Virus record (IMG/VR): IMGVR_UViG_3300046005_000547
Span: 124,001-188,000 of that record
Length of the DNA stretch: 64,000 bases
Strand: one strand, 5' to 3'
Shown here: in pieces, positions 1 through 48,959 of the stretch
How positions within the stretch are numbered: the first letter of the stretch is position 1
Layout: each line of letters begins with the position of its first letter
The notes under the pieces: generated by a model
What the model saw: the letters and a program-made list of their open reading frames with translations, nothing else
What the model was told of the DNA's origin: nothing
The model's database searches: none
Position numbers and translations under genes: made by a program

Positions 1-2025
1 CATTGGTGAAATACCATACACATCTTCATAAACATCATTTGCCAATAATGCGATTGCCGCAGGTACAGCAGTGGCAACTGAACCTAAACCAGATACGGCA
101 GCCAATCCTGCTCCAGCGATATCTCCTTTTACCAATCTACTGATACCTTCCCCAACACCTAATGCAGCACCAATCAATGGAATAGATTTACCCAACATCC
201 CGCCCATGGCAGCAGGTAATCTTTTGGCAATAGAGGTTCCAATCAATGCAGAAGCACTTCCTTTCAATTTATTTCCAACACCGCCCAATACTTTACCGCC
301 AACAGATTTAACTACTCCACCCATCTTACCAACAACTGTTGATTCCTTTACTCCATTAACAACATTAGACGCTAAATTTCCAATAGAAGAACCAGCAACC
401 ATGGCAGCAGTAGCTCCACCAATCGCCTTTACTCCAGTTGATAATGGTTTGAATTTACCTCCGATTTTGGAGGCAATATCTTTTGTTGATTTTCCAAAGG
501 ATTTAGCTTTGTTCTTTAATTTACCACCTTCTTTCTTAGCGTTACCACCAAACAACCCACCCAATAATGATGTATCGGATTCTTCTTTCTCATTGACCCC
601 AAATTTACCCATTTTCAACAATTTGAAAATTTCTGTTTGAACATTCAATTGATTTTGTAATACATCAAATGTTTTGGATTTCTGTAAATTATCTTCAATT
701 TGAGATTCGGAAACTTCATTCGATATATTAGTTGATTCTTTAGAGGTTTCTTTAATTGAATCAGATAACGATTTGATTTCATCTTGTGTATTGGAAACGA
801 CAGTTGTTATCTTAGAGGACTCTTTAATTGAATCAGATAACGATTTGATTTCATCTTGTGTATTGGAAACGACAGTTGTTATCTTAGAGGTTTCTTTAAT
901 TGAATCAGATAATGATTTATTTTCATCTTGAACTTTAGATTCAACAGTTGTTATCTTAGAGGACTCTTTAATTGAATCAGATAATGATTTGATTTCATCT
1001 TGAACTTTAGATTCAACAGTTTCCTTTTTAATTGGAGATTCAACTGGAGTCGATTGAGATGGAATATCTTTAACTGGCTCTTCTTTGACAAATGTTTTAT
1101 CCGTATCCTCTATCTGTTTTCTTAGAGAGGAAAGTTCTTCAGATAATGTTTTAAACACTTCATTGGATTCATCCGTTTTTGGTAAATCTTTAAATGTATT
1201 AAGTTTATCAAACAATTCATTGTATGATTGTTTCATATTCAATAACATTTTGGATTCTTTAATTAGATCTTTCTCAACATCAGAACGTTTTTTATCTTTC
1301 AATAATTCTGGATTTTGTTCTATTGCTTGTTGTGCATATTCTAAATGAGTTTCTTTTACATTTTGTGATTGTAATAATACATCTTTCAAACCAACAATGT
1401 CCGCAAGTTTCTGTATATTTTCATTGGACCCAAACGACAATCCTTTTGTACCAATTTGTTTTATCACAGAAGAGGTTTTGAATTCATTATATCTTGGATC
1501 TTCTTTTACATTATACTTTGGGTTGATTCGTTTAGCTTCTTTAATGTAATCTTTGAACGATTCTCTATTGGATAGATATTTTCCTAATTTTGAATCTTCT
1601 TTTACACCAATAACATTTGTTGCGAATTTCTTTAATGAAGAAAGATTACCAATTGCTGATTTTTTAAACAATGATGAGATTACATTATCCGATTTATCAA
1701 CATCATATTTACCAGAAGGTTTATTTGTTGGTTGTTCTTTTGGTTTTGATTCTGGTGCGTTATCTTTCAAAACGGGTTTCGATTCAATTCTATCTTTAAT
1801 CTCAGATAACAAATCTATCATCTTCATGGAATTGTTGAATTGTTTCTCTTCCGCGAACCTTTCTTCAAATTGAATTTCTTTATCGGATTTACCGCCTGAA
1901 AATCTATTTGTTTCGTTTAATGAGATTTCTATATATTGTATCGCATCGGCAATAGTCGTTGTGTTATCATCTAATGACGATAAATGTTGTAATTGTTTCT
2001 TTAGTATGGAATCGATACTAGACAT
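1..2025 (-). CDS. Baseplate hub / tape-measure-like protein (T4 gp29-like), 3' end outside window
   Basis: Minus frame starts MSSIDSILKKQLQHL at 2025, overlapping the gp51 stop; coiled-coil then Gly/Ala-rich composition; position after gp26-gp51. Absent from ORF track because it runs off the edge. Confidence 0.65.
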   Translation of the reverse strand, partial: MSSIDSILKKQLQHLSSLDDNTTTIADAIQYIEISLNETNRFSGGKSDKEIQFEERFAEEKQFNNSMKMIDLLSEIKDRIESKPVLKDNAPESKPKEQPTNKPSGKYDVDKSDNVISSLFKKSAIGNLSSLKKFATNVIGVKEDSKLGKYLSNRESFKDYIKEAKRINPKYNVKEDPRYNEFKTSSVIKQIGTKGLSFGSNENIQKLADIVGLKDVLLQSQNVKETHLEYAQQAIEQNPELLKDKKRSDVEKDLIKESKMLLNMKQSYNELFDKLNTFKDLPKTDESNEVFKTLSEELSSLRKQIEDTDKTFVKEEPVKDIPSQSTPVESPIKKETVESKVQDEIKSLSDSIKESSKITTVESKVQDENKSLSDSIKETSKITTVVSNTQDEIKSLSDSIKESSKITTVVSNTQDEIKSLSDSIKETSKESTNISNEVSESQIEDNLQKSKTFDVLQNQLNVQTEIFKLLKMGKFGVNEKEESDTSLLGGLFGGNAKKEGGKLKNKAKSFGKSTKDIASKIGGKFKPLSTGVKAIGGATAAMVAGSSIGNLASNVVNGVKESTVVGKMGGVVKSVGGKVLGGVGNKLKGSASALIGTSIAKRLPAAMGGMLGKSIPLIGAALGVGEGISRLVKGDIAGAGLAAVSGLGSVATAVPAAIALLANDVYEDVYGISPM
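749..1022. repeat. 72-bp (24-codon) tandem repeat, ~4 copies, inside the gp29-like gene
   Basis: TCTTTAATTGAATCAGATAA recurs at 749, 821, 893, 965. Confidence 0.95.
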
Positions 2026-9084: not shown

Positions 9085-11853
9085 ATGACAATAAACACAG
9101 ATACTTTACCAAAAGGATTGTATGTACCAAAACGATATGCAAAACAATCTAATATCAAACAGATTCAATTAGCCAATGTCAAAAGATTAGTTATTGCGTT
9201 AGAGGAAGCTGGTGTAACAAATGATGTATGTCAAGCTGCTGTATTAGGGATTTGTTCTGTTGAATCGGGATTTCTTCCTATTGAAGAATTGTATTCTGGT
9301 AACGATAAACAAGCGTATTTTACTCAACAATATTGTACAAGGAAAGGATTACCTGCGTCTCAATGGATTTACTATGGTAAAGGTATTATACAATTAACGG
9401 GTCTGGCTACATATAAAGATACAACAAAATGGTACAAGATAATCTACAAGGAAGATCCAGGAATTATCGAGGATCCGTTTAAAGTAATGAAAGATGATAT
9501 GATGATGAAAATTGTTGTATCTTTCCTATTCATGAAATTACCAAAATTAAGAGATATCCAATCATCACCCGATATTTTCACTATCATACAACAAAAGGTT
9601 AATAGTGGAACCAAAGATAAACATTTCTCCGAGAAACGTCAACGATATGAATTCTTCAAGTCGTTAGGTTCCGGATCAAAACCGACAACAGAAGGTCTTG
9701 CTTCTTTACCTCAAGTTAAAGAAGCATCAATGCCTCCAGAATATTCTCCTGTTACGCCTAAACCATCATACAAAGATTCTGGTAACACCGAACCCCAAAG
9801 AACTGATTCTGAAATATCAAAAGAACCTGCTCATAAACAAGAAGCATTCAGGGAAAATAGAGATGCCAATTTTTCTGAAATTGGATTTACAGATCCACAA
9901 GGTAAATATCCTCTAAGAGAATACATGAATGAATCTGACGTCAATAGATTATCAAGAGGTGTGTTAAGAAGGACTTGTATTGAATTTAAAGATTCAATTA
10001 GAAATGTTGGTATAGATCTACCATTTGGGAAGGAATATGAACAACCAAAATGTCCTATTTCGGCTCAATATCCATTTAATAAAGTAACGGAAACAGAATC
10101 TGGACATGTAATTGAATTAGATGATACACCAGGTAATGAACGTACACATTATTTCCATAGATCTGGTACATTCACCGAAATTGATGCCAATGGTACTACA
10201 GTTAATCAAATCATTGGTGATAATTATTCTATAATGGAAAGGAATGGATATGTTTATGTCAAAGGATCTTGTAATCTAACGGTAGAAGGACAAATTAACA
10301 TTAAATGTAATTCAGATGTTAATTTAGAAGTCAATGGTGATGCAAATTGCGCTTTCCATAATGATGTCACGGTTGGTGTAGCAAACGATTTAAATTTTAA
10401 TGTTGGTAACAATTTCAATCTTTCTATTGGTGGAGATTATAACCTAGAAACTGGAACTGTTGATAACAATCCAAAAGATACCAAAGAAGAAGATAAAGTG
10501 TATGGTGGATTTACGTATCGTTCGAAAGGTATACTCGGATTTGAATCTTCCGCTGGTATTTTCTTTAAATCTGGTAAAGATATAACATCATCTTCTTCTG
10601 GCGTGACATCGATAAGTTCTGGTGACAATTTGATTTTGTCTACGGGTAAAAGTTATTATCTTACTGCTTCATCTAATGTAACATTATCAAGTGGGTCCGA
10701 TATATTCTTATCGGCGTCATCTACTAACATATCAGGAGATTTACCATTAGAAGGATTCGTGACAAATAATCATGATACTGGTAATAGAACTGGTGCGAGT
10801 AATTCAGCACCAAAATCTCCAGACAATTCCCCTAAGATAGAGGAATTAGATATTTCGTTCAATCCTGTTTCCACTGTTAAAGTTGGCGATGAAGACGAAA
10901 GTAAGAATTTAGTTTCGGAAAATAGTAATTTCAAACGTAAATCTTTCAACAGGAAGTATCCAGAAGTGTTATCTTCTAATCAATCCATATTGGAACAATT
11001 ACAACCACCGGAGAGATCCGTCAGAGAAAATTCTAAATTCGAAAATGAAGATAATATGTCAAGAGAATTTAAAGAATATGATGAACGTAAATCTGCTGCT
11101 TTCCCAGATTTAAAAGATAAAGAAAAAGAACCAACTCCTCCACCAAACCCAGAAGCAAAACCAGATGAAAAAGTGGACGAAGATAAAGGTATGTCCGATA
11201 CGCATAAATCTCCTGAAGAAGTTTCCAAACCAACATCTAATCCTGAGATTCATAAAACTATTAGGAATAGTAAAGATTTTCCTTTGTCATTTAAAATCAG
11301 TAAGAATTTCACGTTGGGATCTTTTGTACCATTGAATGCGATGCCGCAGGATATACAATTACCAAAAGGATTAACGGATACTGGACCATCTCATATATTA
11401 TACAAACGAGAAGATCTAGTGGATAATCTAGCGTATCTAGCTGAAAATGTTGCTGAGGTATTATATGAAATGTTAGGTCCATCTAGAGGTAAGTATTCTT
11501 GTCAATCTCAAACTGGGGTATGGTGTGTGAATGATGGGTTGAGAACTAAGGCATCCGAGAATGGTAAGATTACTGGGTCAGACCATTTCAAAGGTAGGGC
11601 AATGGATATGAGATTGGATCCTAAGAAATCAAGATCTCAGATGTATAATCTTGTTCTTGATATTAAGAAGGCTTTACCTACATGGAAGCATTTGATATTG
11701 GAATATAGGGGAAGTGACCAGAATTGGATTCATATTTCATACGGAACTGAAACTGTTATGTCCACTGGTCAATCTGATGGTTCGTCAAACGAAAAAAGAA
11801 CATACACTTACGTAAATGATAAGAAAGTGTCCGAGAAGTTTGTATTGTATTAA
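9085..11853 (+). CDS. gp5: gp5 part B: GH19-like lysozyme, spike beta-helix, C-terminal M15-like peptidase
   Basis: YYGKGIIQLTG (GH19-like); YPFNKVTETESGHVIELDDTPGNER (gp5); SDHFKGRAMD and WIHIS (LAS/M15). Confidence 0.8.
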   Translation: MTINTDTLPKGLYVPKRYAKQSNIKQIQLANVKRLVIALEEAGVTNDVCQAAVLGICSVESGFLPIEELYSGNDKQAYFTQQYCTRKGLPASQWIYYGKGIIQLTGLATYKDTTKWYKIIYKEDPGIIEDPFKVMKDDMMMKIVVSFLFMKLPKLRDIQSSPDIFTIIQQKVNSGTKDKHFSEKRQRYEFFKSLGSGSKPTTEGLASLPQVKEASMPPEYSPVTPKPSYKDSGNTEPQRTDSEISKEPAHKQEAFRENRDANFSEIGFTDPQGKYPLREYMNESDVNRLSRGVLRRTCIEFKDSIRNVGIDLPFGKEYEQPKCPISAQYPFNKVTETESGHVIELDDTPGNERTHYFHRSGTFTEIDANGTTVNQIIGDNYSIMERNGYVYVKGSCNLTVEGQINIKCNSDVNLEVNGDANCAFHNDVTVGVANDLNFNVGNNFNLSIGGDYNLETGTVDNNPKDTKEEDKVYGGFTYRSKGILGFESSAGIFFKSGKDITSSSSGVTSISSGDNLILSTGKSYYLTASSNVTLSSGSDIFLSASSTNISGDLPLEGFVTNNHDTGNRTGASNSAPKSPDNSPKIEELDISFNPVSTVKVGDEDESKNLVSENSNFKRKSFNRKYPEVLSSNQSILEQLQPPERSVRENSKFENEDNMSREFKEYDERKSAAFPDLKDKEKEPTPPPNPEAKPDEKVDEDKGMSDTHKSPEEVSKPTSNPEIHKTIRNSKDFPLSFKISKNFTLGSFVPLNAMPQDIQLPKGLTDTGPSHILYKREDLVDNLAYLAENVAEVLYEMLGPSRGKYSCQSQTGVWCVNDGLRTKASENGKITGSDHFKGRAMDMRLDPKKSRSQMYNLVLDIKKALPTWKHLILEYRGSDQNWIHISYGTETVMSTGQSDGSSNEKRTYTYVNDKKVSEKFVLY

Positions 11854-11857
11854 TTGA

Positions 11858-11897
11858 AAAATCCCGATAGATGAAAATGTCTATCGGGATTCGTTTT
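11858..11897. terminator. Bidirectional intrinsic terminator
   Basis: AATCCCGATAGA..TCTATCGGGATT between convergent genes. Confidence 0.85.
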
Positions 11898-12303
11898 ATT
11901 TGTAATTTAATCTAACATCAGATAAATCATTCAATTGTAAAGGATCTACTTTAAGTGTCTTCTTGAATCTATCAAATTCATCATCATCCCAATTATCACC
12001 TTCTTTCCAAAATTTGATAATCTTAGACGAGTTCAATTCAACATATCTAATAACAATTTTCTTTTCTTTATCAGACATTTTAGTTTTATCTACCACTATT
12101 CTGAGTTGAGGAACAGATATTGTTAATTGTTCTTGTTTATCAGGGAAATTTGGATAGTATTTCACTCTACATCCATGAGACCCTTGTTCTGTTGAAATAT
12201 ATACAACACCTTTAGATAATCCAGTTTTAGATGGACCCAAATTTGCCATTTCAAACATTGTTGAATCTTCTATTTCTTCGCGTCATTCTTTAAATGTTTT
12301 CAT
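11896..12303 (-). pseudogene. Hypothetical protein with in-frame TGA at codon 7 (downstream part open 11896-12258)
   Basis: GGAGG RBS, then ATG AAA ACA TTT AAA GAA TGA CGC GAA in frame with MFEMANLG. Confidence 0.55.
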
Positions 12304-15732: not shown

Positions 15733-16083
15733 TCACCATTCAACAATAATTCTAATGCCATCATCTTCCTTCTTAGAGGAAACCTTATACCCTAATTCAA
15801 TCAATTTATCTAAAGATCGTTTTTGATAACAATAAGAACCTTTATAGAAGTATTTGAATGAACATTTGAACTCACCTTTAGCTGCTTTCTTTTTGATTTG
15901 GAATAACCAATTATCAACAAACATTTGTAATTTGTTCTGTTGACGTTTAGAGATCCAATGAGCCCGTTTTGCTGTAAATATAGAATCCCAAGGTTCATTA
16001 TCGCAATAATCGAATCCTGGATCTATAATTTCATTTGTGTCTTCAAACATTCCTGAATCTTTAATACCTTTTAAACTATACAT
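15733..16083 (-). CDS. Hypothetical protein
   Basis: AGGAG RBS; first gene downstream of repeat-array promoter 1. Confidence 0.7.
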   Translation of the reverse strand: MYSLKGIKDSGMFEDTNEIIDPGFDYCDNEPWDSIFTAKRAHWISKRQQNKLQMFVDNWLFQIKKKAAKGEFKCSFKYFYKGSYCYQKRSLDKLIELGYKVSSKKEDDGIRIIVEW

Positions 16084-16139
16084 TTGCTTTCTCCTAAGTT
16101 GAAATTATTATATGTTAAATTGATAAAATATAAAAGTCG

Positions 16140-17820
16140 AGGAAGATACTATAAGAATATTAAAAACCATTAATAACTCTAGCTGAAACATCGACATAGT
16201 CTAGTATACGCTTGTTTTATCGATTTCGAAAGGAGTTTCTCGATGATTGTAATTTACACATTCGATTAACATTTCATCTTAAAGGCTCTTTCGATACATG
16301 GTATCTATTGATTCGATGTTATCGTTTAATTTAACAGTCCATATTGTTGATTTAAGATGGATTGATTATATCTTGTAGAGTTGATTGACATAATACAGGA
16401 AGATTCCACTAGGATGGATTATTGGACAAATAATGGATGTTAACAATTCAACATAGAACTATTATAATGTAAATTCCAAACAATAAAAATCCCGAAAGAA
16501 CTTTTGATTCAATCGGGATCTGAATGGCAGAGATTTTATGTTGAATAATTGATTAAATTAATACTCGATAAAGACATATTATTGTTCTTGTAGTAATATA
16601 AAAGACATTAAAGAATACTAAAACGTATTAATAGAACTAACTCAAACCGTCGACATAGTCTAGTATACGCTCGTTTTATCGAAAAGTCAAGAGAAAACTT
16701 TAACTTGTAATAATCATATTCGATGTCTAAGATTATCTTTCGATACGTTTAAGACTCTTTCGATGTTTGATTATAGTTGATTCGATACCCTCACTTAATT
16801 TAACATGGAAATTTGTTGATTTAAGATGGATTGGTTATATCCTGTAGAGTTGAATGATGTATATTGGAAAGATTCCACTAGGATGGATTATTGGACAAAT
16901 AACGGTTGTTATGTGAATGATTTGGAATAGGTATATTGTAAATTTTAAACAATAAAAATCCCACTCAGAATAAATCTGGTGGGATCTGATACGCAGAGAT
17001 TTTAATGTTGAATTATTGTATAGAATATACTCGATAAAGAGTCTTGTAGTAATATAGAAGAACACTTAATGAAAGTAAAGGTAATAACTGAAACGTCGAC
17101 ATAGTCTACTATACTACATTTTCTAGGATTTCGAAAGGAGTATTCTTATCCTGTAATAATCATATTCGATATGTCGTACATCGAAAGGATTATCTTAAGA
17201 TGTCCTCGATACATGATGATTACAGTTTCGATGTTCTTGTTTAATATAGACATCCATATTTGGATTTTAAGATGGATTGATTATATGACATAGAGTTGAT
17301 TGGTATATATTGTTTAAACTCCATTAGGATGGAATAACGAGCAAATAATGATTGTTATCAAACCAATATGGAATTGATATATTGTAAATTGAATCCAATA
17401 AAAATCCTGATGGAGTGGTTGGTTCTCATCAGGATTTGGAAGTAGAGATTTTAATGTTGAATTATAGTAATATAATAATGTCGATAAAGAATCTTGTAGT
17501 AATATAGAAGACATTAAAGAATATAAAAATGACCTTAAAGGCAATAACTGAAACGTCGACATAGTCTAGTATACCCGAGTTTCTAACATTTCGAAAGGAG
17601 TAATTAGACTCTGTAATAATCATATTCGATACCATATACATCGAAATACTATCTTAAGATGTCCTCGATACATGATTATAATTGATTCGATGTTAACATT
17701 AAATCCTGTCCAGAAATTTGCCAATATAAGATGGATTCAATATATCCTGTAGAGTTTCTTGTTTATTATACAAAGATTCCATTAACATGGAGTATTAACC
17801 AAACAATGACGATATTATAC
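16140..17820. repeat. Tandem array of four ~455-bp degenerate non-coding units (cluster 1)
   Basis: TCGACATAGTCTA at 16191, 16650, 17096, 17556; AAGATGGATT-N10-TGTAGAGTT block in each; hairpins at ~16485, ~16954, ~17400. Confidence 0.95.
16662..16690 (-). promoter_or_regulatory. sigma70-type promoter TTGACT-N17-TATACT inside repeat unit 2
   Basis: Near-consensus; other units have TTTCGA-N17-TATACT/TATAGT/TATGCT at the same place. Confidence 0.75.
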
Positions 17821-17829
17821 AATGGATAC

Positions 17830-17837
17830 TATAAATA
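17830..17837 (+). promoter_or_regulatory. T4-type late promoter TATAAATA
   Basis: Exact consensus upstream of GAGGAG RBS of 17862. Confidence 0.8.
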
Positions 17838-17861
17838 AATTAAAATTAGAGGAGAAAAATA

Positions 17862-18827
17862 ATGTGCGTTATTGCTTGTAAGTATTTGACTGGTATCGGA
17901 TGGGTTGGTGTAAAGGATAGAGATAGAAATTACAAACCAGTGATTTCCATTATCCAAGACGCAAGAGAAGGTGTTGAATCTATCTTCATAAAAGATTCTG
18001 TCACCAAATACTCTGAAGGTATAAATGAATTCGGTGTTGGTATTTTGAATGCAGCCACTTCCGTTAGAAACGATGAAAGTGCAGCAGCAGCCGCAAGAAG
18101 ATATGAGAGAGAACGTAAGAAATCCAAAGGAACTTACATTGAACCAGATGGCATTAAAATTAGACATGCATTAAGATTCAAAACTCCGAAGGAATCTGCT
18201 GAGTATTTGGCATCTGTTGAATTGAGAGGTCACACTTTGGTATTCAACAAAGAAGAATGTTATATCTTAGAGGGAACTGATAAGAAATTGGATTTTGATT
18301 ATAATAAAAAGATGGCAGCGGAGAACCCAGACCATGAATGGGAACCGATGGAATATGAATTTGTAATTAAAAAAATTCAAAAAGATAGATTTGTTGTAAG
18401 AACAAATCACGGCAATTTCCTACCATGGTCTGGATACCAAAAAGACTCTGATGATTCAAAACAAATGTTTTCTAGAATGTCTTCTGAAACCAGACATAAC
18501 ACAGTCATCAAGAATTTACAAAATGTTGATTCCATCGAAGGTATGTTAGATGCGATTTCGGATACATCTAATGAAGATAAACAATTGAATCCAGTTAGAA
18601 CAGGCGATTATCAAGATAGAACTAAATTGAAAACAACCGGTCAATTATGTTTAATACCAGATAAATGTACGTTGATTTACAGACCTATCTGGTGTGAAAT
18701 GGATTTATCTTATGTTGATAAAATCAATTCATTAACAACTAAAACATTCTTTGAATTGAAACCTTTTAGATTAACTGAAAACATCATGATGTCTTTCAAA
18801 GATTACCAATTCAATTACAATTTGTAA
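17862..18827 (+). CDS. Ntn-hydrolase-like protein (N-terminal Cys; NRDE/C45-like)
   Basis: MCVIAC..VKDRDR..EGINEFGVGILN..RTNHG. Confidence 0.65.
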   Translation: MCVIACKYLTGIGWVGVKDRDRNYKPVISIIQDAREGVESIFIKDSVTKYSEGINEFGVGILNAATSVRNDESAAAAARRYERERKKSKGTYIEPDGIKIRHALRFKTPKESAEYLASVELRGHTLVFNKEECYILEGTDKKLDFDYNKKMAAENPDHEWEPMEYEFVIKKIQKDRFVVRTNHGNFLPWSGYQKDSDDSKQMFSRMSSETRHNTVIKNLQNVDSIEGMLDAISDTSNEDKQLNPVRTGDYQDRTKLKTTGQLCLIPDKCTLIYRPIWCEMDLSYVDKINSLTTKTFFELKPFRLTENIMMSFKDYQFNYNL

Positions 18828-18840
18828 ATCCCAAACAATA

Positions 18841-18876
18841 AAAATCCCGTAAGACATATCATCTTACGGGATCTTT
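18841..18876. terminator. Intrinsic terminator
   Basis: ATCCCGTAAGA..TCTTACGGGAT. Confidence 0.85.
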
Positions 18877-19178
18877 TATTTCAATAAAATGTTGAGAAAT
18901 CCATCCTCAAGTATATTTGGTTGGTAAATCAGTTCCTTTGTTTTCATCCAATTATCGAATTCCTTGATATCAAATTTGGATAATTCATTTTTATGGATAT
19001 CTGTCTTTATAATAACAAATGTTGTTTCCTTATTGTAACTGATACGAAAGGAAACAACTCGCATTATACAATTTTCTATTACATTTAAGATATGTTCGTT
19101 ATTTGGCATATATTTGGATTTTAAGATGGATTCAGGATATCCTGTAGAGTTGATTGACATATAACGTAAAGATTCCAA
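18876..19178 (-). CDS. Hypothetical protein (5' part overlaps a repeat fragment; start uncertain)
   Basis: 100-aa ORF ending at terminator. Confidence 0.4.
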   Translation of the reverse strand: MESLRYMSINSTGYPESILKSKYMPNNEHILNVIENCIMRVVSFRISYNKETTFVIIKTDIHKNELSKFDIKEFDNWMKTKELIYQPNILEDGFLNILLK

Positions 19179-19192
19179 TATGGTTGATTAAT
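19108..19192. repeat. Isolated partial copy of the repeat-unit core block
   Basis: CATATTTGGATTTTAAGATGGATT-N10-TGTAGAGTTGATTGACATA..AAGATTCCA. Confidence 0.85.
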
Positions 19193-19237
19193 GTTCAAAT
19201 TACGATACATTAACGAATCTGTAATTTTGTATAACAA

Positions 19238-20901: not shown

Positions 20902-20918
20902 GATTTCTTTACTCAATA

Positions 20919-20956
20919 AAAATCCCATCAGACTTTTACATCTAATGGGATTCTTT
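20919..20956. terminator. Bidirectional intrinsic terminator
   Basis: AATCCCATCAGA..TCTAATGGGATT, near copy of 12383. Confidence 0.8.
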
Positions 20957-22011
20957 TATTTCATTTTCAACAATAATTGTTCATATACATTTGTAGCAAC
21001 GTTTGCCATCATAACAGGAGGTACAGACATACCACAAGCATAATCTGGTTTTACCTTACCAAAATTGAAATCCAATGGAAACGAACTAGCCAATATGAAT
21101 TCTTTATCAGTCATTGTTCTTGGAATAAAATGATGATAACAAGATTTACCAGAAGTCAATGTATTACAAGGTTTATCTGGGTGTAATTTCTTATATGAAA
21201 AGAAATTACCATTCGATAATTCTGATTTATCAAATCCAGATCCAGGTTCCACTGATGGATATATATCACGAATCGAAGGTGGTAATTCTTTATCTGGAAA
21301 TACATCATCTTCAGATATATCTTTAAATGGAATAATCGGTTCATTAAATTCCATTTGTATTCTTGGTAATAATTCTAATCCTTTATATTCCAAGAATTGT
21401 TCGCCTAGATCCTTCCTCACACAAATAAAGAACACCCGTTCCCTTTTTTGCGGTAATCCCATCTTAGAACCATCTAATAAGAAATGTTGACAGTAATATC
21501 CAGCTTCATCAAATTCCTTGTATATTCTATCAACATATTTCATTGCCTTACCGAGAATCAACCCTTTGACATTTTCTGCCACGACAATCTTCGGTTGAAG
21601 TTTCTTTGCCAAATCAATGAAATCAAAGAACAATGTATCCAAGACTTGTTTTGCTTGACCTTCCGAGAAGACTTTTTCCTTACCCCAATCTTTATCTCTA
21701 TTACCATTCATGGAAAAAGAAGAGCAGGGTGGACTACCATCAAGGATATCCAAGTTGTATAATTCTTCAGGAATATCATCTCTCTTGACGAATTCCCGTA
21801 TATCCTGAATGAAGGAATACTTTGGATTATGATTCAGATTGTAAATTTCATTCATTCTTGGATCTATCTCAACGCAACCTAAGACATTACCTCCAGCTAG
21901 TTTATATCCCATTGTAGAACCACCACAACAAGCGAAACAACTGAATACGGTAAATTTATCTTTGGTGAATGTCGTTTCCGATAAATTCCATTCATATGGG
22001 AATTTATGCAT
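20956..22011 (-). CDS. DNA (cytosine-5) methyltransferase
   Basis: FACCGG (motif I), GSPPC (IV), ENV (VI), QKRERVF (VIII), GMSVPP (X). Confidence 0.93.
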   Translation of the reverse strand: MHKFPYEWNLSETTFTKDKFTVFSCFACCGGSTMGYKLAGGNVLGCVEIDPRMNEIYNLNHNPKYSFIQDIREFVKRDDIPEELYNLDILDGSPPCSSFSMNGNRDKDWGKEKVFSEGQAKQVLDTLFFDFIDLAKKLQPKIVVAENVKGLILGKAMKYVDRIYKEFDEAGYYCQHFLLDGSKMGLPQKRERVFFICVRKDLGEQFLEYKGLELLPRIQMEFNEPIIPFKDISEDDVFPDKELPPSIRDIYPSVEPGSGFDKSELSNGNFFSYKKLHPDKPCNTLTSGKSCYHHFIPRTMTDKEFILASSFPLDFNFGKVKPDYACGMSVPPVMMANVATNVYEQLLLKMK

Positions 22012-34076: not shown

Positions 34077-34209
34077 TTAATACTCTCCATGTGATATATA
34101 AGATGATTCTATTATAATGTATTCTGGTCTAATCTAAAGAATTATTTTAGATGAAGTATTAATGTATATAGATGACAACCTAAGAATGACTATGTATAAT
34201 TGAATCCAA

Positions 34210-34247
34210 TAAAAATCCCACTCAGATTAAATTTCTGGTGGGATTTG
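34210..34247. terminator. Terminator of the type found in the repeat units
   Basis: AAAATCCCACTCAGA..TCTGGTGGGATTT, as at 16954, 37881, 38693. Confidence 0.8.
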
Positions 34248-34341: not shown

Positions 34342-35463
34342 ATGACCAGCAATAATATCTATATCGATAAAATAATCGAATTATGTTCAGATAATGAACA
34401 AACAGCAGAGTATATCTCCATCGTATCCAATGCTCGAATTCGATCATCTAATAAAAAAGAAGCAAAGGTGATTTTGGGATACACCGAAGAACACCATATA
34501 TTACCCAAATCGTTTAAGATGGGTGGAGAAACAGATAAATTAAATTACGCTTATCTATCTGCAAGAGAACATTATCGCGTCCATCAATTGTTAATAGAAA
34601 TGGGATTGAAACGTAATTTACACGAGAAGATGATTCATGCGTTTTGGTTGTTAAGTGTGTTGGACAAACACAAGTCCATATCCGAAGAAGAATATCAAGA
34701 GTTGAAGATTTTAAGAAGCAAATATCATAATTGGAAAGATCCCGAATGTATTCAAAAATGTAGAGATACGTATTTCGAGAAAACTGGATTCACCCATAAT
34801 ATGAAAGATCCAGAATGTAAAGAAAAAAGTAGAGATACACATTTTGAGAAAACTGGATATACTCATTATATGAAAGATCCCGAATGTATCCAAAAGTGTA
34901 AAGATACTCTTTTTGAAAGAACTGGATACACACATCATATGAAAGATCCAGAATGTATCCAAAAGGGTAAAGATACCAATTTTGAGAAAACTGGATACGA
35001 CAATCCTATGAAAAATCCAGAATGTAAAGAAAAGAATAAACGAGCCTTGGAAATAAAATATGCTAGACCATTAGTCTTACAGATTCTACAAGACGTAGAA
35101 AAATATAATATTATTAATCCAAGAAAAATTATGGGAATCAATGACCCTAATTGGAGACACGTCGATGATGAAAAACTGGAAGAAGGATCTATCAAGTTCT
35201 ATAAACATTTAGATGAACGTAAAATCAAGATAAAGGAATACGAATGTAGGATAAACGAGATTAGTTCCACATTTAAATCAATAGATGATAAACGATCCTT
35301 GATTTCATATATCAAAGAAATCAAGGATTTTTATAATATAACAAATTATACTGGTATAATGGAAGTGGATAGAAAGTGGAAAAGGGGTTTAAATGTGCTA
35401 GAATTACAAATTGCATTAGAAAAATTATTGAAACATACCGTTGATAAATTCTATATGAATTAG
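34342..35463 (+). CDS. Free-standing HNH-type homing endonuclease with 23-aa repeats
   Basis: YTEEHHILPKS..GG..N..LSAREHYRVHQLL; ACTAAATA late promoter and hairpin leader. Confidence 0.85.
   Translation: MTSNNIYIDKIIELCSDNEQTAEYISIVSNARIRSSNKKEAKVILGYTEEHHILPKSFKMGGETDKLNYAYLSAREHYRVHQLLIEMGLKRNLHEKMIHAFWLLSVLDKHKSISEEEYQELKILRSKYHNWKDPECIQKCRDTYFEKTGFTHNMKDPECKEKSRDTHFEKTGYTHYMKDPECIQKCKDTLFERTGYTHHMKDPECIQKGKDTNFEKTGYDNPMKNPECKEKNKRALEIKYARPLVLQILQDVEKYNIINPRKIMGINDPNWRHVDDEKLEEGSIKFYKHLDERKIKIKEYECRINEISSTFKSIDDKRSLISYIKEIKDFYNITNYTGIMEVDRKWKRGLNVLELQIALEKLLKHTVDKFYMN
34735..35035 (+). repeat. 69-bp coding repeat, ~4.4 copies (KDPECxxKxxDTxFEKTGYTHxM)
   Basis: Unit starts at 34735, 34804, 34873, 34942, 35011. 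Confidence 0.92.
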
Positions 35464-36950: not shown

Positions 36951-36979
36951 TTGACTTTTTAATTAAAATAGTTTATACT
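36951..36979 (+). promoter_or_regulatory. sigma70-type promoter TTGACT-N17-TATACT
   Basis: Near-consensus, pointing into a long region with no credible plus-strand ORF. Confidence 0.8.
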
Positions 36980-36985
36980 AGATAA

Positions 36986-37620
36986 GAACCAAAACTTTTA
37001 ACTAAATAAGATTGAACAATTAAAAACTTTGAAACGCACGAAACTCCATATAAAACGAACAAAAATATAAATAAATTTAAAAAATATAAAATTGAATACG
37101 TAGAAACATCATAAAGTAAAAATCTAGTTCCAAAGCTGAATAGAAGTCCAACGAAAGAGGTCCGTCGAATAGTTGGCACACATTGAAAGGTTCCTCCCAA
37201 ATAATTGTAAACAATTAGATAACTATTGACTTATAGGTAAGTATAGCGATGTCTACGGGGTATGCAAACGTCAAATTGTGTGATAAAAGTCTTTATTTTT
37301 AAAGACAGGATGTGGGTGACTATAAGTTTGACCACACCATTGTTGAAGTCGCTAGAATTGGCTCAACAATGCCCCGTTTGAATCGCGAGATTGTAGACAG
37401 TCGTAAAAGGAAACCGGCAAACCCTCCTTACTTTTTCAGAAGTTGACTAATTCTAGAGTGCCTTTCGGAAGAAGCACACTTTACTCTGGTAGGGTAAGAA
37501 GTGCCTTTCGGGTTGCACTCGATGCAACATCTATATACAAAAAGCGACAGATAATCTGCGTAAGCGCAGCGTCGTAGATTATTAAACGAGCGAAGCGAGT
37601 TTATGGCTTTTGCTTTTTAC
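36986..37620 (+). ncRNA. Candidate large structured non-coding RNA (family unassigned)
   Basis: Promoter, locally raised GC, many nested stems, several loop-to-distal complementarities, U-rich end. Confidence 0.7.
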
Positions 37621-37859
37621 TAATACTCTTCCTCGATCTTCTCCGACCTCATCCGAAATTCATTAGAATCATCTTATGTTAAATGTATCGATAAAGACAT
37701 CTTAAAATCAATATACAGATTAATCTTTAAATGACACTTAACAAAAATCAAAAGCAATGGTTTAGATGAACAAAAAAATGTTCATCTAAACTGCTTCGCA
37801 AGGTTTCTGTTAACATTATTATATTAAGATGACCTTTAAATGGAGAATAGAATATACAT

Positions 37860-39275
37860 TAAAGATATTCTATATCAAATAAAAATCCCACTCAGAAATT
37901 TATCTGGTGGGATTTTAAGATTAATATACATTAGAATGATTCTAGTTAAATTTAACATTGATATTTGTTGTTTTAAGACAGATTCATTACATCCTGTAGA
38001 GTTTCTTGTCATATTATACAAAGATTCAATTAAGATGGATTATTGGACAAATAATGGATGTATTATAATACATTTAAAACATCCTATATGAATTTAAACA
38101 TATTAAATGAATCTCTATCGCATTCGATACATTAAATGTGTCTTAAGATGTTCTTGTTAAATTTAACATGGAAATTTGTTGATTTAAGATAGATTTATAA
38201 TATGACATAGAGTTGATTGACATATATTGTTGAAATTCCACTAGAGTGGATTATTGGACAAATTATGATGGAATTAAATGATGTTTAGAATCATATTAAA
38301 TGAAATTAATGATTTATATTATGTCTATAAAGACTCTTGAAGTAATATAATAAACTCTTAAAAACCATTAATAACTCTACCTGAAACATCGACATAGTCT
38401 AGTATACTGTCTTTTCTACCATTTCGAAAGGAGTATTCTTATACTGTAATATACAGACTCGATATCTAGTTTATCGAATGACATCTTAAGACTCTTTTCG
38501 ATACATGATTATTACTCATTCGATGTTAATGTTTAATTCTATACAGTTATTTGTTGATTTAAGGTGGATTCATTATAACCTGTAGAGTTGATTGATGTAT
38601 ATTGGAAAGATTCCATTAAGATGGATTAACGAACAAATAATGGATGTTATCAAAGTTGTATACAATTCATAATCTGTAAATTTAAAACAATAAAAATCCC
38701 ACTCAGAAATTCATCTGGTGGGATTTTAAATTATACTCGACTCCAATAAAATGTATATCGATAATCAGAAACATCTGATGAATCATAAAGATGCCCTCTT
38801 CCGATATACCCCATTACGATTCTATCGTCGAATAATCCATAATATTGATTCTTAAACATATTCATAATAGATCTATAGAGAATGATTACTATTATTTATT
38901 CTGTAGTAATATATTAATGTCTATAAAGAATCTAAGTTAAAAACTAATAACAATAGATACATTAACTGAAACGTCGACATAGTCTAGCATATCCGAGTTT
39001 CTGACATTTCGAAAGGAGTAATTAGACTCTGTAATAATCATATTCGATATGTCTTACATCGAAAGACTATCTTAAGATGTTCTCGATACATGATTACAGT
39101 TTCGATGTTATTGTTTATTATAGACATCCATATTTGGATTTTAAGATGGATTAGAATTATGATGTAGAGTTGATTGACATATTACAAGAAGATTCCATTA
39201 AAATGGATTATTGGACAAATAAAAGATGAATTAAGAATGGTTTGAAATGTTAATTCTGTAAATTTTATCCAATAA
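37860..39275. repeat. Second cluster of the same repeat (2 full + 2 partial units), same orientation
   Basis: TCGACATAGTCTA at 38389, 38974; core block at ~37974, ~38185, ~38560, ~39141; hairpins at 37881, 38693. Confidence 0.92.
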
Positions 39276-39309
39276 AAAGCCGAATGTCCTTTTCAAGACA
39301 TTCGGCTTC
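39276..39309. terminator. Terminator after recQ
   Basis: AAGCCGAATGTC..GACATTCGGCTT. Confidence 0.85.
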
Positions 39310-39311
39310 GA

Positions 39312-44989: not shown

Positions 44990-45448
44990 ATGGCCAACGT
45001 ACAATCAATGTGCACTTCATTTAAACAAGATTTAATGAACGGATTACATGCATTCGGAACATCTGTTGTTAGAGGTACAACAACTCCAGATACATTTAAA
45101 GCTGCGTTGTATCTAGCGTCAGCGTCTTTGGGTGCAGGGACAACTGCTTATTCGACAACTGGTGAAGTTTCTGGTACAGGATACACTGCTGGTGGTGTTG
45201 CTGTCACATTCGGAACTGCTCCTGCTACAGCAAATGGTACTGCTTATGTCACCCCATCTGCTTCTATTGTATTCAGTGGTGTTACATTATCTACAGCGTT
45301 TGATGCTGTGTTAATTTATAATAATACATCAACTGGTAAAAATGCGGTATCTGTTCACACGTTTGGTAGTCAAATTGTGACGGCTGGAACATTCACTTTG
45401 ACTATGCCAGTAAATAATGACACCACTGGTTTAATTAGATTGTCTTAA
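44990..45448 (+). CDS. Putative virion structural protein
   Basis: SFKQDLM..FKAALY..TTAYSTTGEVSGTGYTAGG..LIYN..GTFT. Confidence 0.7.
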   Translation: MANVQSMCTSFKQDLMNGLHAFGTSVVRGTTTPDTFKAALYLASASLGAGTTAYSTTGEVSGTGYTAGGVAVTFGTAPATANGTAYVTPSASIVFSGVTLSTAFDAVLIYNNTSTGKNAVSVHTFGSQIVTAGTFTLTMPVNNDTTGLIRLS

Positions 45449-45497
45449 TATGAATGAGGAATTTTTTTAATTCCTCATTTATCACAAGGAGAAGAAT

Positions 45498-45908
45498 ATG
45501 TCATTATTGACTGAAATACAAAATGTAGGTTTATCGGATGATGCTGCGATTGTGGAGTATTTCAACACGCCGTCAGTTGCCGCAAAGGGTAGCATTGAAA
45601 CCAAGTTAATCAAGCAGTATTTGATTCTTAGAGATTTGAGAGTTGCAATTAAAAACGGCACAAGTGTAGCGTGCCAGCAAGTGAATTTATCACTCGATGA
45701 TTTTGAAACGTTTGATTGTTCTAATCCAATGATTTTAGCGAAATTGAGTCAAGTGTTAGATGATTTGATTGCGGATAATTTAGTTCCTGCATTCGTTCAA
45801 GCTGATAAAGATTATATTTTATCTATGGCTGACACATTGATTACACCTGCACAGTCACTGGGTTTAACTGTGAATTTTGAAACCGTCAACACTGCTTTGA
45901 GAGGTTAG
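45498..45908 (+). CDS. Hypothetical protein in virion cassette
   Basis: AAGGAG RBS. Confidence 0.7.
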   Translation: MSLLTEIQNVGLSDDAAIVEYFNTPSVAAKGSIETKLIKQYLILRDLRVAIKNGTSVACQQVNLSLDDFETFDCSNPMILAKLSQVLDDLIADNLVPAFVQADKDYILSMADTLITPAQSLGLTVNFETVNTALRG

Positions 45909-45911
45909 AAA

Positions 45912-46373
45912 ATGGGAACAATGAAATCGGAGCAATCTGCACCCGTACCACTAACAGCAACAGGTTTAGCCACTTTAGCGGCTGCAACGTATTGTGTGTC
46001 GGACACCAAAACCAATACAACTAACCAACCGTATGACGTGATTTTAAATGTCAACGTTAAATGTGCAACAGGCGGTACGCTTGCAAATCGTCAAGTCGTC
46101 GTGTTTGGTCAAGCAAGTTTGGATGGTACGACGTGGCAAACAGGCGCAACAAGCGGCACATCAACGGTTAATGAAGGTGACTTAACGTTTTTAGGAACAG
46201 TATCGGTTGCTGAACAAAACGTTAGCCACATTAGAAATTTTAGTGTATTGCAAGCGTTTGGCTTCGTCCCTGCTCATGTGCGATTTGTGATTAAAAATGA
46301 CATCGGTACAGGTACCTTGCCGCTTGTGGAAGGCACATTATCAACGTCTGAAATCACAATGACGTATGCCTAG
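45912..46373 (+). CDS. Putative virion beta-sandwich protein
   Basis: T/G/A-rich; ASLDGTTW. Confidence 0.6.
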   Translation: MGTMKSEQSAPVPLTATGLATLAAATYCVSDTKTNTTNQPYDVILNVNVKCATGGTLANRQVVVFGQASLDGTTWQTGATSGTSTVNEGDLTFLGTVSVAEQNVSHIRNFSVLQAFGFVPAHVRFVIKNDIGTGTLPLVEGTLSTSEITMTYA

Positions 46374-48651: not shown

Positions 48652-48959
48652 TGGCAAACTTTGTCGAAGGAGATACAGAATCCGCGTTACGCGTCACTTG
48701 TATGGACAATAATAATTCTTCCATAATAAACCTTAATGGAACTTCTGTTAAGATACGTTGGAAGAATAAATCGAATGTTATTAAATTGAAAGAAATGACG
48801 ATAATTGATGCACCTAAGGGTGTCGTTCAATATCAATTTGATGTTGGTGAATTAGAACCACCAGAAATGTATTTTGATATTATAATAACAAATCTTTCTT
48901 CTGGAAGAACCGTCACATGCGAAAATGTAGTGAAGATTATTGTAAGACATCATATTTGA
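48651..48959 (+). CDS. BppU-N-like Ig-fold adaptor protein
   Basis: GDT..INLNGTSV..IIDAPKGVVQYQF. Confidence 0.6.
   Translation: MANFVEGDTESALRVTCMDNNNSSIINLNGTSVKIRWKNKSNVIKLKEMTIIDAPKGVVQYQFDVGELEPPEMYFDIIITNLSSGRTVTCENVVKIIVRHHI

What the first reader, a model, noticed from the sequence alone, without database searches (positions are those of the whole stretch)
16140..17820. Tandem array of ~455-bp promoter-to-terminator units with fixed-spacing conserved blocks
Seen: four units (spacing 459, 446, 460). Short blocks are conserved while spacers vary in sequence but not length: AAGATGGATT-N10-(TG/CA)TAGAGTT in every unit, and on the minus strand TTTCGA (TTGACT in unit 2)-exactly N17-TATACT/TATAGT followed by AGACTATGTCGA (16203-31, 16662-90, 17108-36, 17568-96). 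For units 2-4, about 150-175 nt downstream on minus lies a hairpin plus U-tract (~16485, ~16954, ~17400). Inference: each unit is a small transcription unit making a variable ~150-175-nt RNA with a constant 5' end, preceded by ~250 bp of phased protein-binding sites. Options: array of small RNAs (decoy, guide or antitoxin-like), multiple T4-style promoter plus unwinding-element origins, or a DNA sponge for a host or phage protein. It is not a CRISPR array.
Basis: partly seen in the sequence, partly recalled or inferred. Interest (0 to 1): 0.85.

Follow-up and report, generated by a model that had tools for sequence, protein, structure and literature searches.

The report
Tandem gene-less phage transcription cassettes
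A large T4-like phage stacks 2-6 copies of a ~455-bp gene-less promoter-leader-terminator unit in front of its early operons; this fills about 5% of the genome and is conserved in a sister phage, but its purpose is unknown.

Summary

All signals read on the minus strand. Each unit has:
- an intrinsic terminator;
- a conserved block A;
- a cluster of TCGA boxes;
- promoter P1 (TTTCGA or TTGACT, N17, TATACT or TATAGT) with the invariant start AGACTATGTCGA;
- a U-rich 140-200-nt leader.

Unit 1 reads into the ORF at 16083. Units 2-4 end at terminators.

This array is one of seven in the 235-kb genome. A second lies at window 37920-39311. A sister phage of 249 kb, with a ligase 75% identical, has eight arrays, one of them syntenic before the ligase gene.

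I found no conserved ORF, no conserved RNA fold apart from the terminators, and no Rfam, Pfam or PHROG match.

Best reading: these are iterated gene-less early transcription cassettes that make short leader RNAs and concentrate regulator sites. They are an enlarged, tandem relative of PeSL promoter-terminator cassettes.

The role of the stacking is unresolved. Candidates are a promoter stack, a regulator sponge or timer, replication origins, or selfish amplification.

The parts
16085..17861 (-). Array 1: four ~455-bp gene-less units. It lies between ORF 15733-16083 (-) and ORF 17862-18827 (+).
16191..16231 (-). P1 of unit 1: TTTCGA, N17, TATACT, then the invariant AGACTATGTCGA. It reads through a 119-nt leader into ORF 16083-15733.
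16650..16690 (-). P1 of unit 2: TTGACT, N17, TATACT, plus the invariant start.
17096..17136 (-). P1 of unit 3: TTTCGA, N17, TATAGT, plus the invariant start.
17556..17596 (-). P1 of unit 4: TTTCGA, N17, TATACT, plus the invariant start.
16482..16520 (-). Intrinsic terminator that ends the unit-2 transcript (-15.1 kcal/mol, followed by a U5 tail).
16951..16986 (-). Intrinsic terminator that ends the unit-3 transcript (-17.1 kcal/mol).
17397..17436 (-). Intrinsic terminator that ends the unit-4 transcript (-13.3 kcal/mol).
16521..16661 (-). U-rich, unstructured leader-like transcribed segment of unit 2. The equivalent segments of units 3 and 4 are 16987-17107 and 17437-17567.
16354..16388 (-). 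Further copies are at 16823-16857, 17269-17303 and 17728-17762.
16402..16440 (-). Block A: two ATCCAT repeats 21 bp apart plus a short inverted repeat. It is the best conserved block across the two phages. Further copies are at about 16871-16909, 17317-17355 and 17777-17812.
   Evidence: (family D5)
16210..16330 (.). TCGA-box cluster between P2 and P1, made of TTCGAT/ATCGAA/TTTCGAAA motifs. The same cluster occurs at 16691-16800, 17137-17245 and 17597-17705.
15733..16083 (-). First ORF (116 aa, no family match) of the short operon driven by unit 1.
37920..39311 (-). Array 2 of the same unit family: two nearly full units with P1 boxes at 38389 and 38974, plus two partial P2 modules.
18840..19204 (-). 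Ordinary cassette built from the same parts: a solitary P2 module (19109-19204), a 77-aa ORF (19109-18876) and a terminator (18876-18840).

Best explanation
The array is a stack of gene-less early transcription cassettes of a divergent T4-like phage.

Read on the minus strand, each ~455-bp unit is a complete regulatory region without a gene. It runs: terminator, block A, promoter-like module P2, a cluster of TCGA boxes, promoter P1 with an invariant transcription-start box, a U-rich leader of 140-200 nt, and the next terminator.

Shown or directly readable:
- the geometry of the signals;
- their conservation in 23 copies here and 24 in a sister phage;
- the compensatory changes in the terminator stems;
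- the absence of coding potential and of RNA structure;
- the position of the arrays at the head of leftward operons.

Inferred:
- Host RNA polymerase starts at every P1, and probably at P2.
- The internal units release short terminated leader RNAs: about 140-200 nt from P1 and about 330-380 nt from P2.
- Only the last unit, or read-through polymerases, enter the operon.
- The TTTCGAAA/TCGAAAG boxes and block A are sites for a DNA-binding regulator that sets early timing.

Stacking would multiply promoter and operator dosage at each early operon. The terminators would insulate the operon from upstream transcription.
For: P1 geometry:
- N17 spacing and a TATACT, TATAGT or TATGCT hexamer occur in 23 of 23 own copies.
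- 23 of 24 copies in the relative keep a -10-like hexamer, mostly TATGAT.
- 5 of 5 single copies in distant T4-like contigs have TTGACT-N17.

Terminators: 17 of 18 distinct sequences fold at -12 to -18.6 kcal/mol and carry a U5 tail. The stems differ in sequence and show compensatory pairs. The same terminator type follows ordinary genes.

The unit next to the operon reads into real genes: ORF 16083, DNA ligase and an HNH endonuclease.

Internal leaders are homologous to those 5'UTRs.

P2 alone sits just before ORFs in four places.

There is no conserved ORF and no family match. There is no RNA fold apart from the terminator and no Rfam match.

The genome has seven arrays and the 249-kb relative has eight, one of them syntenic before the ligase gene.

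Paralogues are only 69% identical, and units from the two phages are 59% identical. Even so, the blocks and the unit length (426-501 bp) are kept, which argues for selection on each unit.

TCGA occurs at 14.5 per kb in the arrays against 2.8 per kb elsewhere. The TTTCGA box is also the -35 element of other promoters of this phage.
Against: - There are no transcript data. Promoter and terminator function is inferred from consensus and conservation only.
- The sigma-70 scan as a whole is not enriched in this AT-rich region: 31 sites found against 28 expected.
- TTTCGA matches TTGACA at only 3 of 6 positions, so most P1 copies may need a phage factor.
- P2 lacks a -35 element, and its downstream box AATCCATCTT is not kept in the relative.
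- A reason for stacking terminated promoters is not evident from sequence.
- The unit family was found only in two phage genomes from related samples.
- The host is unknown.
Confidence: 0.55

Rival explanations
1. The arrays are replication origins of the T4 R-loop type. A P1 transcript stays annealed in the A+T-rich leader and primes leading-strand synthesis. The TCGA boxes and block A would act as iteron-like sites, as at T4 oriE.
For: - T4 origins consist of a promoter plus an A+T-rich unwinding element, or an early promoter plus iterons at oriE. Several lie where transcription switches strand (PMC3016281).
- Array 1 sits at a strand switch and at a local minimum of cumulative GC skew.
- There are 7-8 arrays, mostly 20-40 kb apart.
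- In distant T4-like contigs the single P1 box lies next to uvsY/uvsW, which is the region of T4 oriF.
Against: - The leader is only 72% A+T, against about 69% for the window. Its RNA is U-rich and G-poor (12% G), which from general knowledge is unfavourable for stable R-loops.
- Each transcript meets a strong terminator.
- Up to six tandem copies per locus are not needed for an origin.
- GC skew here follows gene strand.
- T4 origins share no sequence motif.
Confidence: 0.15
2. The arrays act as a DNA sponge or timer. With about 3 TTTCGA/TCGAAA boxes per unit, they hold more sites for a box-binding regulator, or for RNA polymerase holoenzyme, than the promoters in front of ordinary genes. They would titrate that factor and set the early-to-middle switch.
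For: - The arrays hold 67 TTTCGA/TCGAAA boxes in about 9.5 kb (16-fold enrichment). Only about 5 box-bearing promoters lie outside the arrays in 60 kb.
- TTTCGAAA is an 8-bp palindrome that overlaps the -35 position of P1.
- The boxes and block A are conserved across the two phages.
Against: - No binding protein has been identified.
- The boxes are not regularly phased.
- This idea does not explain the conserved leader and terminator.
- It overlaps with the best explanation rather than excluding it.
Confidence: 0.12
3. The arrays are a selfish or neutral by-product. Recombination between repeated regulatory cassettes, as in PeSL mini-circle formation and re-integration or unequal crossing-over, amplified an empty cassette. 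It persists without a function of its own.
For: - PeSL cassettes recombine into mini-circles and re-insert in T4-type phages (PMC2839356, PMC4122927).
- The units are mosaics of shared variants.
- Unit number differs between the syntenic ligase arrays: 5 here and 4 in the relative.
- A gene is inserted inside a unit at the 196-kb array, and an HNH gene lies between units at the 73-kb array.
Against: - Paralogues are old (63-79% identical), yet every copy keeps intact boxes, spacing and a working hairpin. The spacers drift.
- The system persists in two species with similar copy number and placement.
- Dispersed direct repeats are costly in a highly recombinogenic phage.
Confidence: 0.12
4. The arrays encode sibling base-pairing or protein-sponging small RNAs, for example guides, antitoxin-like RNAs or Hfq titrators. 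The leader body would be the active part.
For: - Each unit has its own promoter and terminator and makes an unstructured U-rich body plus a terminator hairpin with a U-tail.
- Many diverged copies exist.
Against: - No seed-like segment is conserved between the two phages apart from the 5' start box and TAAAATCT.
- No antisense match of 15 nt or more to non-array sequence was found, other than shared terminators.
- The body is homologous to mRNA leaders.
- There is no Rfam match.
Confidence: 0.05
5. The units are decayed copies of a protein-coding gene family.
For: ORFs of up to 82 aa occur in single units.
Against: - ORF frames and lengths are not conserved among 20 units, and there is no ribosome-binding site.
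- The ORF pieces have no Pfam or PHROG match.
- Conservation lies in short blocks at fixed spacing, not in a reading frame.
Confidence: 0.01

Closest known systems
PeSL / PmSL composite promoter-terminator cassettes of T4-type phages (Arbiol 2010, PMC2839356; Comeau 2014, PMC4122927)
   Same: Both are repeated, conserved intergenic regulatory cassettes of T4-like phages. Both combine a stem-loop terminator with a sigma-70-like early (or middle-type) promoter, are dispersed through early regions, and are mosaic and prone to recombination. Compact terminator-plus-promoter elements of this kind also exist in this window, for example 34244-34110.
   Different: A PeSL, as the two papers depict it, is a compact intergenic element: the stem-loop lies just upstream of the promoter, and a ribosome-binding site and an ORF follow. 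Here the unit is about 455 bp and the terminator lies about 290 bp upstream of P1. The unit also carries a second promoter-like module, block A and a TCGA-box cluster. The internal units have no ORF at all, and the units stand head to tail in arrays of 2-6.
Lambda pR'-tR' unit (short '6S' transcript released until Q antitermination); from my own knowledge, not tested here
   Same: A strong promoter fires a short terminated transcript of about 150-200 nt in front of an operon. A conserved initial transcribed region lies next to the -10 element.
   Different: No Q-like gene has been identified, and a pause signal was not tested. Lambda has one such unit, not 27.
T4 replication origins oriE, oriF and oriG (PMC3016281)
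   Same: They combine a promoter with downstream A+T-rich DNA, and oriE has repeated short boxes. There are several per genome, and some lie at transcription strand switches.
   Different: T4 origins share no sequence and are single-copy. Here one family is iterated, each transcript is terminated, and the leader is not markedly more A+T-rich than the genome.
Long repeat regions of Campylobacter group II T4-related phages (PMC4546147)
   Same: These are non-coding repeat regions that separate large genome modules in T4-related myoviruses. Unit number varies between phages.
   Different: Their units are 72-86 bp, up to 18 per arm, and direct or inverted. No promoter-leader-terminator anatomy is described for them.
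Tandem sibling sRNA genes such as Listeria LhrC1-4; from my own knowledge
   Same: Several short RNA genes stand in tandem, each with its own promoter and terminator.
   Different: Those are host genes with defined seed motifs. No conserved seed or target was found here.

Membership tests
PeSL (promoter-early stem-loop cassette) | A stem-loop or terminator lies just upstream of a sigma-70-like early promoter within one short intergenic element. | tested here: not met
   The terminator lies about 290 bp upstream of P1, and about 100 bp upstream of the -10-like hexamer of P2. Compact terminator-promoter elements do exist elsewhere in the window.
PeSL (promoter-early stem-loop cassette) | The promoter is followed by a Shine-Dalgarno sequence and the start codon of a downstream ORF. 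| tested here: not met
   This holds only for the operon-proximal unit. Internal units have no conserved ORF or ribosome-binding site.
PeSL (promoter-early stem-loop cassette) | The cassettes are associated with insertions, deletions and gene swaps between close relatives. | tested here: inconclusive
   Unit number differs at the syntenic ligase array (5 against 4), and genes are inserted within or between units. Sister strains are nearly identical.
Sigma-70-type promoter (P1) | A -35-like and a -10-like hexamer are separated by 16-18 bp. | tested here: met
   TTGACT or TTTCGA, N17, TATACT or TATAGT in 23 of 23 copies. The TTGACT form is also kept in distant phages. Activity was not tested.
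Intrinsic (Rho-independent) terminator | A G+C-rich hairpin is followed by a U-tract, and the stem is kept by compensatory change. | tested here: met
   17 of 18 distinct sequences fold at -12 to -18.6 kcal/mol and carry UUUUUAUU. Three stem pairs show changes on both sides.
T4-type R-loop origin | A promoter lies immediately upstream of an A+T-rich DNA unwinding element. | tested here: inconclusive
   The promoter is present. The leader is 72% A+T against about 69% for the window, and its RNA is only 12% G.
T4-type R-loop origin | It drives replication initiation or autonomous replication during infection. | not testable with these tools
   This needs infected-cell DNA analysis.
CRISPR array | Short (24-48 bp) identical repeats are separated by unique spacers of similar length. 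| tested here: not met
   The period is about 455 bp, the whole unit is homologous between copies, and there is no short repeat-spacer pattern.
Described RNA families (Rfam 15) | A match to a covariance model. | tested here: not met
   There are no hits at gathering threshold. With the E-value threshold the array gave only one chance-level match (SNORD19B, E 0.21); the terminator-like matches belong to the array-2 scan.
Structured non-coding RNA | A conserved secondary structure supported by covariation. | tested here: not met
   RNAalifold finds only the terminator helix in P1 transcripts and in P2-to-terminator RNAs.

The most novel reading that the evidence does not exclude
The gene-less units are a dedicated genome element of this phage lineage, not debris. 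About 27 live promoter-operator-terminator units are spread over 7-8 loci. They would work together as a genome-wide control device. It could be a titration sponge or timer for a regulator that binds the TTTCGAAA box, or for host RNA polymerase. It could be a set of antitermination-gated promoter amplifiers. Or it could be the phage's replication origins.
Probability: 0.25. Interest if true: 0.8.

Novelty: new variant of a known kind. Interest (0 to 1): 0.6.

Why it matters
About 5% of a 235-kb phage genome is spent on non-coding units. Each unit keeps intact promoter, operator-like and terminator signals although the copies are only about 70% identical. A second phage species has the same layout.

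That is hard to explain as debris. It points to a regulatory or replicative use of iterated gene-less transcription units that has not been described for T4-like phages. It also extends the PeSL idea from short linkers to large autonomous cassettes.

The invariant 12-nt start box AGACTATGTCGA is shared with distant T4-like phages, where it sits next to uvsY. It is a ready handle for finding the factor that reads it.

If the arrays turn out to be origins, sponges or antitermination-gated promoter stacks, they would give a simple sequence marker for early control regions in uncultured large phages.

Tried and rejected
**Searches that led nowhere**
- Tandem Repeats Finder did not report the array, because the copies are too diverged.
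- blastn of the array against GenBank phages found nothing.
- tblastn with neighbouring proteins showed only 24-30% relatives and no synteny with Chryseobacterium phage MA9V-2.
- Protein-pattern scans with the 321-aa neighbour and with the ligase found only the same phage.
- The scan for AAGATGGATT-N12-TAGAGTT in viral contigs returned mostly chance hits. nhmmer confirmed only the same phage.
- The metagenome scan for the P1 box returned mostly chance-level 18-mers. It added copies of the uvsY-linked locus and one further T4-like contig, L056, but no new arrays.

**Readings I rejected**
- The AAGATGGATT..TAGAGTT block as a plus-strand promoter for genes 17862 and 19276. The module also occurs directly before minus-strand ORFs, is missing before the plus-strand flank gene of the ligase array, and the plus-strand genes have their own TATAAATA.
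- A long-range RNA helix between the TCGA region and the leader. It is not kept in unit 4, and alifold does not find it.
- A leaderless peptide starting at the ATG inside the start box. Its length ranges from 4 to 40 codons.
- A 20-codon plus-strand ORF present in 12 of 17 units. It has no ribosome-binding site and is not kept in the relative (with the sequence).
- TAGACT as a repeated pause element. Its count roughly equals the number of units.
- IHF or DnaA boxes, checked by eye. They fit poorly or are not conserved.
Full report
**Context**

The window is positions 124001-188000 of IMG/VR contig IMGVR_UViG_3300046005_000547, which is 234,735 bp long. The contig is a divergent T4-like myovirus of about 31% G+C. 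It encodes:
- a gp48-like tail-tube cap, a tail protein and a gp5-like hub;
- RNR, PNK, a RecQ-like helicase and a C5 methylase.

The best GenBank phage matches are only 24-30% identical at protein level. The window has no tRNA genes and no Rfam hit at gathering threshold.

**The observation**

Window 16085-17861 is an ORF-poor gap between ORF 15733-16083 (minus strand) and ORF 17862-18827 (plus strand). It holds four units with start-to-start spacing of 459, 446 and 460 bp. The units align over their whole length at 73% mean column identity. A profile built from them finds each unit at E = 1e-110 to 1e-118.

- The 19-nt box gives 6 matches at up to 3 mismatches, against 0.01 expected.
- AAGATGGATT-N12-TAGAGTT gives 9 matches, against 0.52 expected.

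The same searches showed that the array is not unique. A second array lies at 37920-39311, and a solitary module lies at 19109-19204.

**Anatomy of a unit, read on the minus strand**

1. *P1.* The -35-like hexamer is TTTCGA (18 copies) or TTGACT (5 copies). Exactly 17 nt separate it from TATACT, TATAGT or TATGCT, and the invariant AGACTATGTCGA follows directly. This holds in all 23 distinct copies recovered from this genome.
2. *Leader.* It is 139-203 nt long, with 42% U and 12% G. It has a constant 5' end, one to three copies of a short sub-repeat, and a conserved TAAAATCT just before the terminator.
3. *Terminator.* It is an intrinsic terminator. 17 of 18 distinct sequences from the two phages fold at -12 to -18.6 kcal/mol and are followed by UUUUUAUU. 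Many different stem sequences occur, and the pairs change on both sides. The same terminator type ends ordinary genes at 18840-18876, 20914-20941 and 34207-34244.
4. *Block A.* It lies about 55 nt downstream of the terminator and holds two ATCCAT repeats 21 bp apart plus a short inverted repeat.
5. *P2.* The block CAATCAACTCTAC is followed after 4-5 nt by a TATAAT-like hexamer (TATAAT, TATAAC, TATATT, TATTAT).
6. *TCGA-box cluster.* It lies between P2 and P1. TCGA occurs at 14.5 per kb in the arrays against 2.8 per kb elsewhere, and 64% of array CpGs lie in TCGA against 12% elsewhere.

**Why the minus strand**

- P1 of unit 1 reads through a 119-nt leader into ORF 16083-15733.
- In other arrays the operon-proximal unit reads into DNA ligase, an HNH endonuclease or small ORFs, through leaders of 119-185 nt.
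- The internal leaders are homologous to these 5'UTRs.
- The P2 module stands alone directly before ORFs in four places:
  - window 19109-18876, a 77-aa ORF with its own terminator;
  - an HD-domain gene in L013;
  - a 101-aa gene inserted within a unit of the 196-kb array;
  - a gene in the relative.
- The plus-strand genes 17862 and 19276 carry their own TATAAATA, the T4 late-promoter consensus, 25-35 nt before the start codon.

**What the units are not**

- *Not coding.* ORF frames and lengths are not conserved among 20 units and lack ribosome-binding sites. The ORF pieces match no Pfam or PHROG family.
- *Not a structured RNA.* RNAalifold on 15 P1 transcripts and on 11 P2-to-terminator RNAs finds only the terminator helix. 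Rfam gives nothing on the array beyond one chance-level match; the terminator-like matches are in the array-2 scan.
- *No antisense targets in the window.* The only matches are shared terminators.

**Genome-wide picture**

The unit family forms seven arrays in this genome, at about 42, 73, 105, 141 (the finding), 162, 196 and 229 kb. Each has 2-6 units, and there are at least 23 P1 copies in all. That is roughly 12 kb, or 5% of the genome.

Five of the seven arrays are in the same orientation. Each sits at the head of genes transcribed in the P1 direction. Some arrays lie at a divergent junction (arrays at 141 and 105 kb). Others lie between co-directional clusters (arrays at 42, 162 and 196 kb).

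Canonical TTGACW-type promoters are otherwise rare in the window. Ordinary early or middle genes use a third class, TTTCGATG-N13-CAT-TATAAT-AGATTT, sometimes right after a terminator. The TTTCGA box is therefore a genuine promoter element of this phage.

**Comparative evidence**

A ligase search found a 75%-identical ligase on a 249,362-bp contig (IMGVR_UViG_3300046008_000242, also Ga0485183_000008). That phage has a syntenic four-unit array before its ligase operon. It has eight arrays in all, at about 10, 40, 44, 77, 97, 138, 176 and 210 kb, with 24 P1 copies.

Units are 69% identical within each genome and 59% identical between genomes. Unit length stays within 426-501 bp.

These blocks are conserved across both genomes:
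- block A;
- CAATCAACTCTA;
- the ATCGAAAG boxes;
- the P1 -35 box;
- the -10 element plus start box;
- TAAAATCT;
- the terminator ends.

The spacers drift, and AATCCATCTT is not kept. Old, diverged copies that all keep intact signals argue for selection on each unit.

The P1 box, as TTGACT-N17-TATACT or TATGAT followed by AGACTATGTCGA, also occurs once in more distant T4-like contigs. There it lies next to uvsY and uvsW. It occurs once more in L056, where it directly drives a gene. Many of the single 18-mer hits in the metagenome scan are at chance level, and I disregarded them.

Four of the other arrays recur near-identically in contigs from sister samples, and the 229-kb array differs by one substitution in about 1.7 kb. 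The finding's own array was recovered only from the window's contig.

**Interpretation**

The descriptive conclusion is solid. The finding is a tandem stack of gene-less regulatory cassettes, each a full early control region closed by a terminator.

The mechanism I commit to, at confidence 0.55, has four parts:
- Polymerase starts at every P1, and probably at P2.
- The internal units release short leader RNAs.
- The last unit feeds the operon.
- The box clusters are regulator sites, so stacking multiplies promoter and operator dosage and insulates the operon.

What the stacking achieves is not shown. The rivals are:
- *R-loop origins.* They are suggested by the strand switch, the mostly 20-40-kb spacing, the uvsY link and the T4 precedent. 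They are weakened by terminated, G-poor transcripts and a leader no more A+T-rich than the genome.
- *A regulator or polymerase sponge*.
- *Selfish amplification of PeSL type*.
- *Base-pairing sRNAs.*
- *Decayed genes*, which the evidence effectively excludes.

**Comparison with known systems**

The closest described kind is the PeSL/PmSL cassette of T4-type phages (PMC2839356, PMC4122927). The units share its ingredients and its recombinogenic, mosaic character. They fail two of its defining features: the stem-loop is not adjacent to the promoter, and no ORF follows.

The repeat regions of Campylobacter phages have 72-86-bp units without this anatomy (PMC4546147).

I therefore rate the finding as a new variant of a known kind.

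Noticed in passing
window 36951-37800 (+): A G+C-richer non-coding stretch of about 500 nt (37100-37640) is full of tetraloop-like hairpins. A P1-like promoter (TTGACT-N17-TATACT at 36951) and a TATAAATA at 37066 both point into it. The plus strand folds better than shuffles (z -2.66), while the minus strand gives z -1.09. It has no significant Rfam match (best E 0.21, below gathering) and no homologue in the fetched loci. It may be a new large structured phage RNA.
   Followed up: partly
window 63750, 36394, 13367, 12363 and about 34150 (all minus strand): A third, highly stereotyped promoter class, TTTCGATG-N13-CAT-TATAAT-AGATTT, stands before ordinary minus-strand genes. At 34244-34110 it directly follows a terminator, forming a compact PeSL-like element.
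   Followed up: partly
L006 1388-1956 (also L008, L015, L016, L046, L051, L057, L068, L075): In more distant T4-like contigs the same promoter and start box occurs once. It lies in the gap before uvsY-uvsW and points away from uvsY into the 3' end of the preceding gene. This region corresponds to T4 ori(uvsY).
   Followed up: partly
window 20956-22011 (-); L066 7-6290: A C5 cytosine methylase lies 3 kb from the array. The relative carries two Tet/JBP dioxygenases, a GATase and an ADDT gene upstream of its ligase array. The DNA is therefore probably hypermodified, and TCGA, which is 5-fold enriched in the arrays, could be a modification motif.
   Followed up: no
L007 617-1258; L003+L004 joined 11731-12036: An HNH_3 endonuclease gene sits between two units of the 73-kb array. 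A 101-aa ORF is inserted inside a unit of the 196-kb array, between P2 and the TCGA boxes. The arrays therefore accept gene insertions.
   Followed up: partly
window 740-1002 and 34726-35033: There is a 72-bp tandem repeat of 3.7 copies (90% match). There is also a 69-bp repeat of 4.5 copies inside ORF 34342-35463 (DUF7487).
   Followed up: no
window 45000-47000: A local G+C peak reaches 0.46, against about 0.31 for the window. It lies in a plus-strand gene block (44990-48959) and may be recently acquired DNA.
   Followed up: no
window 17830 and 19238 (+): TATAAATA, the T4 late-promoter consensus, occurs only four times in 64 kb. Two copies lie 25-35 nt before the plus-strand genes that flank the array.
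   Followed up: partly
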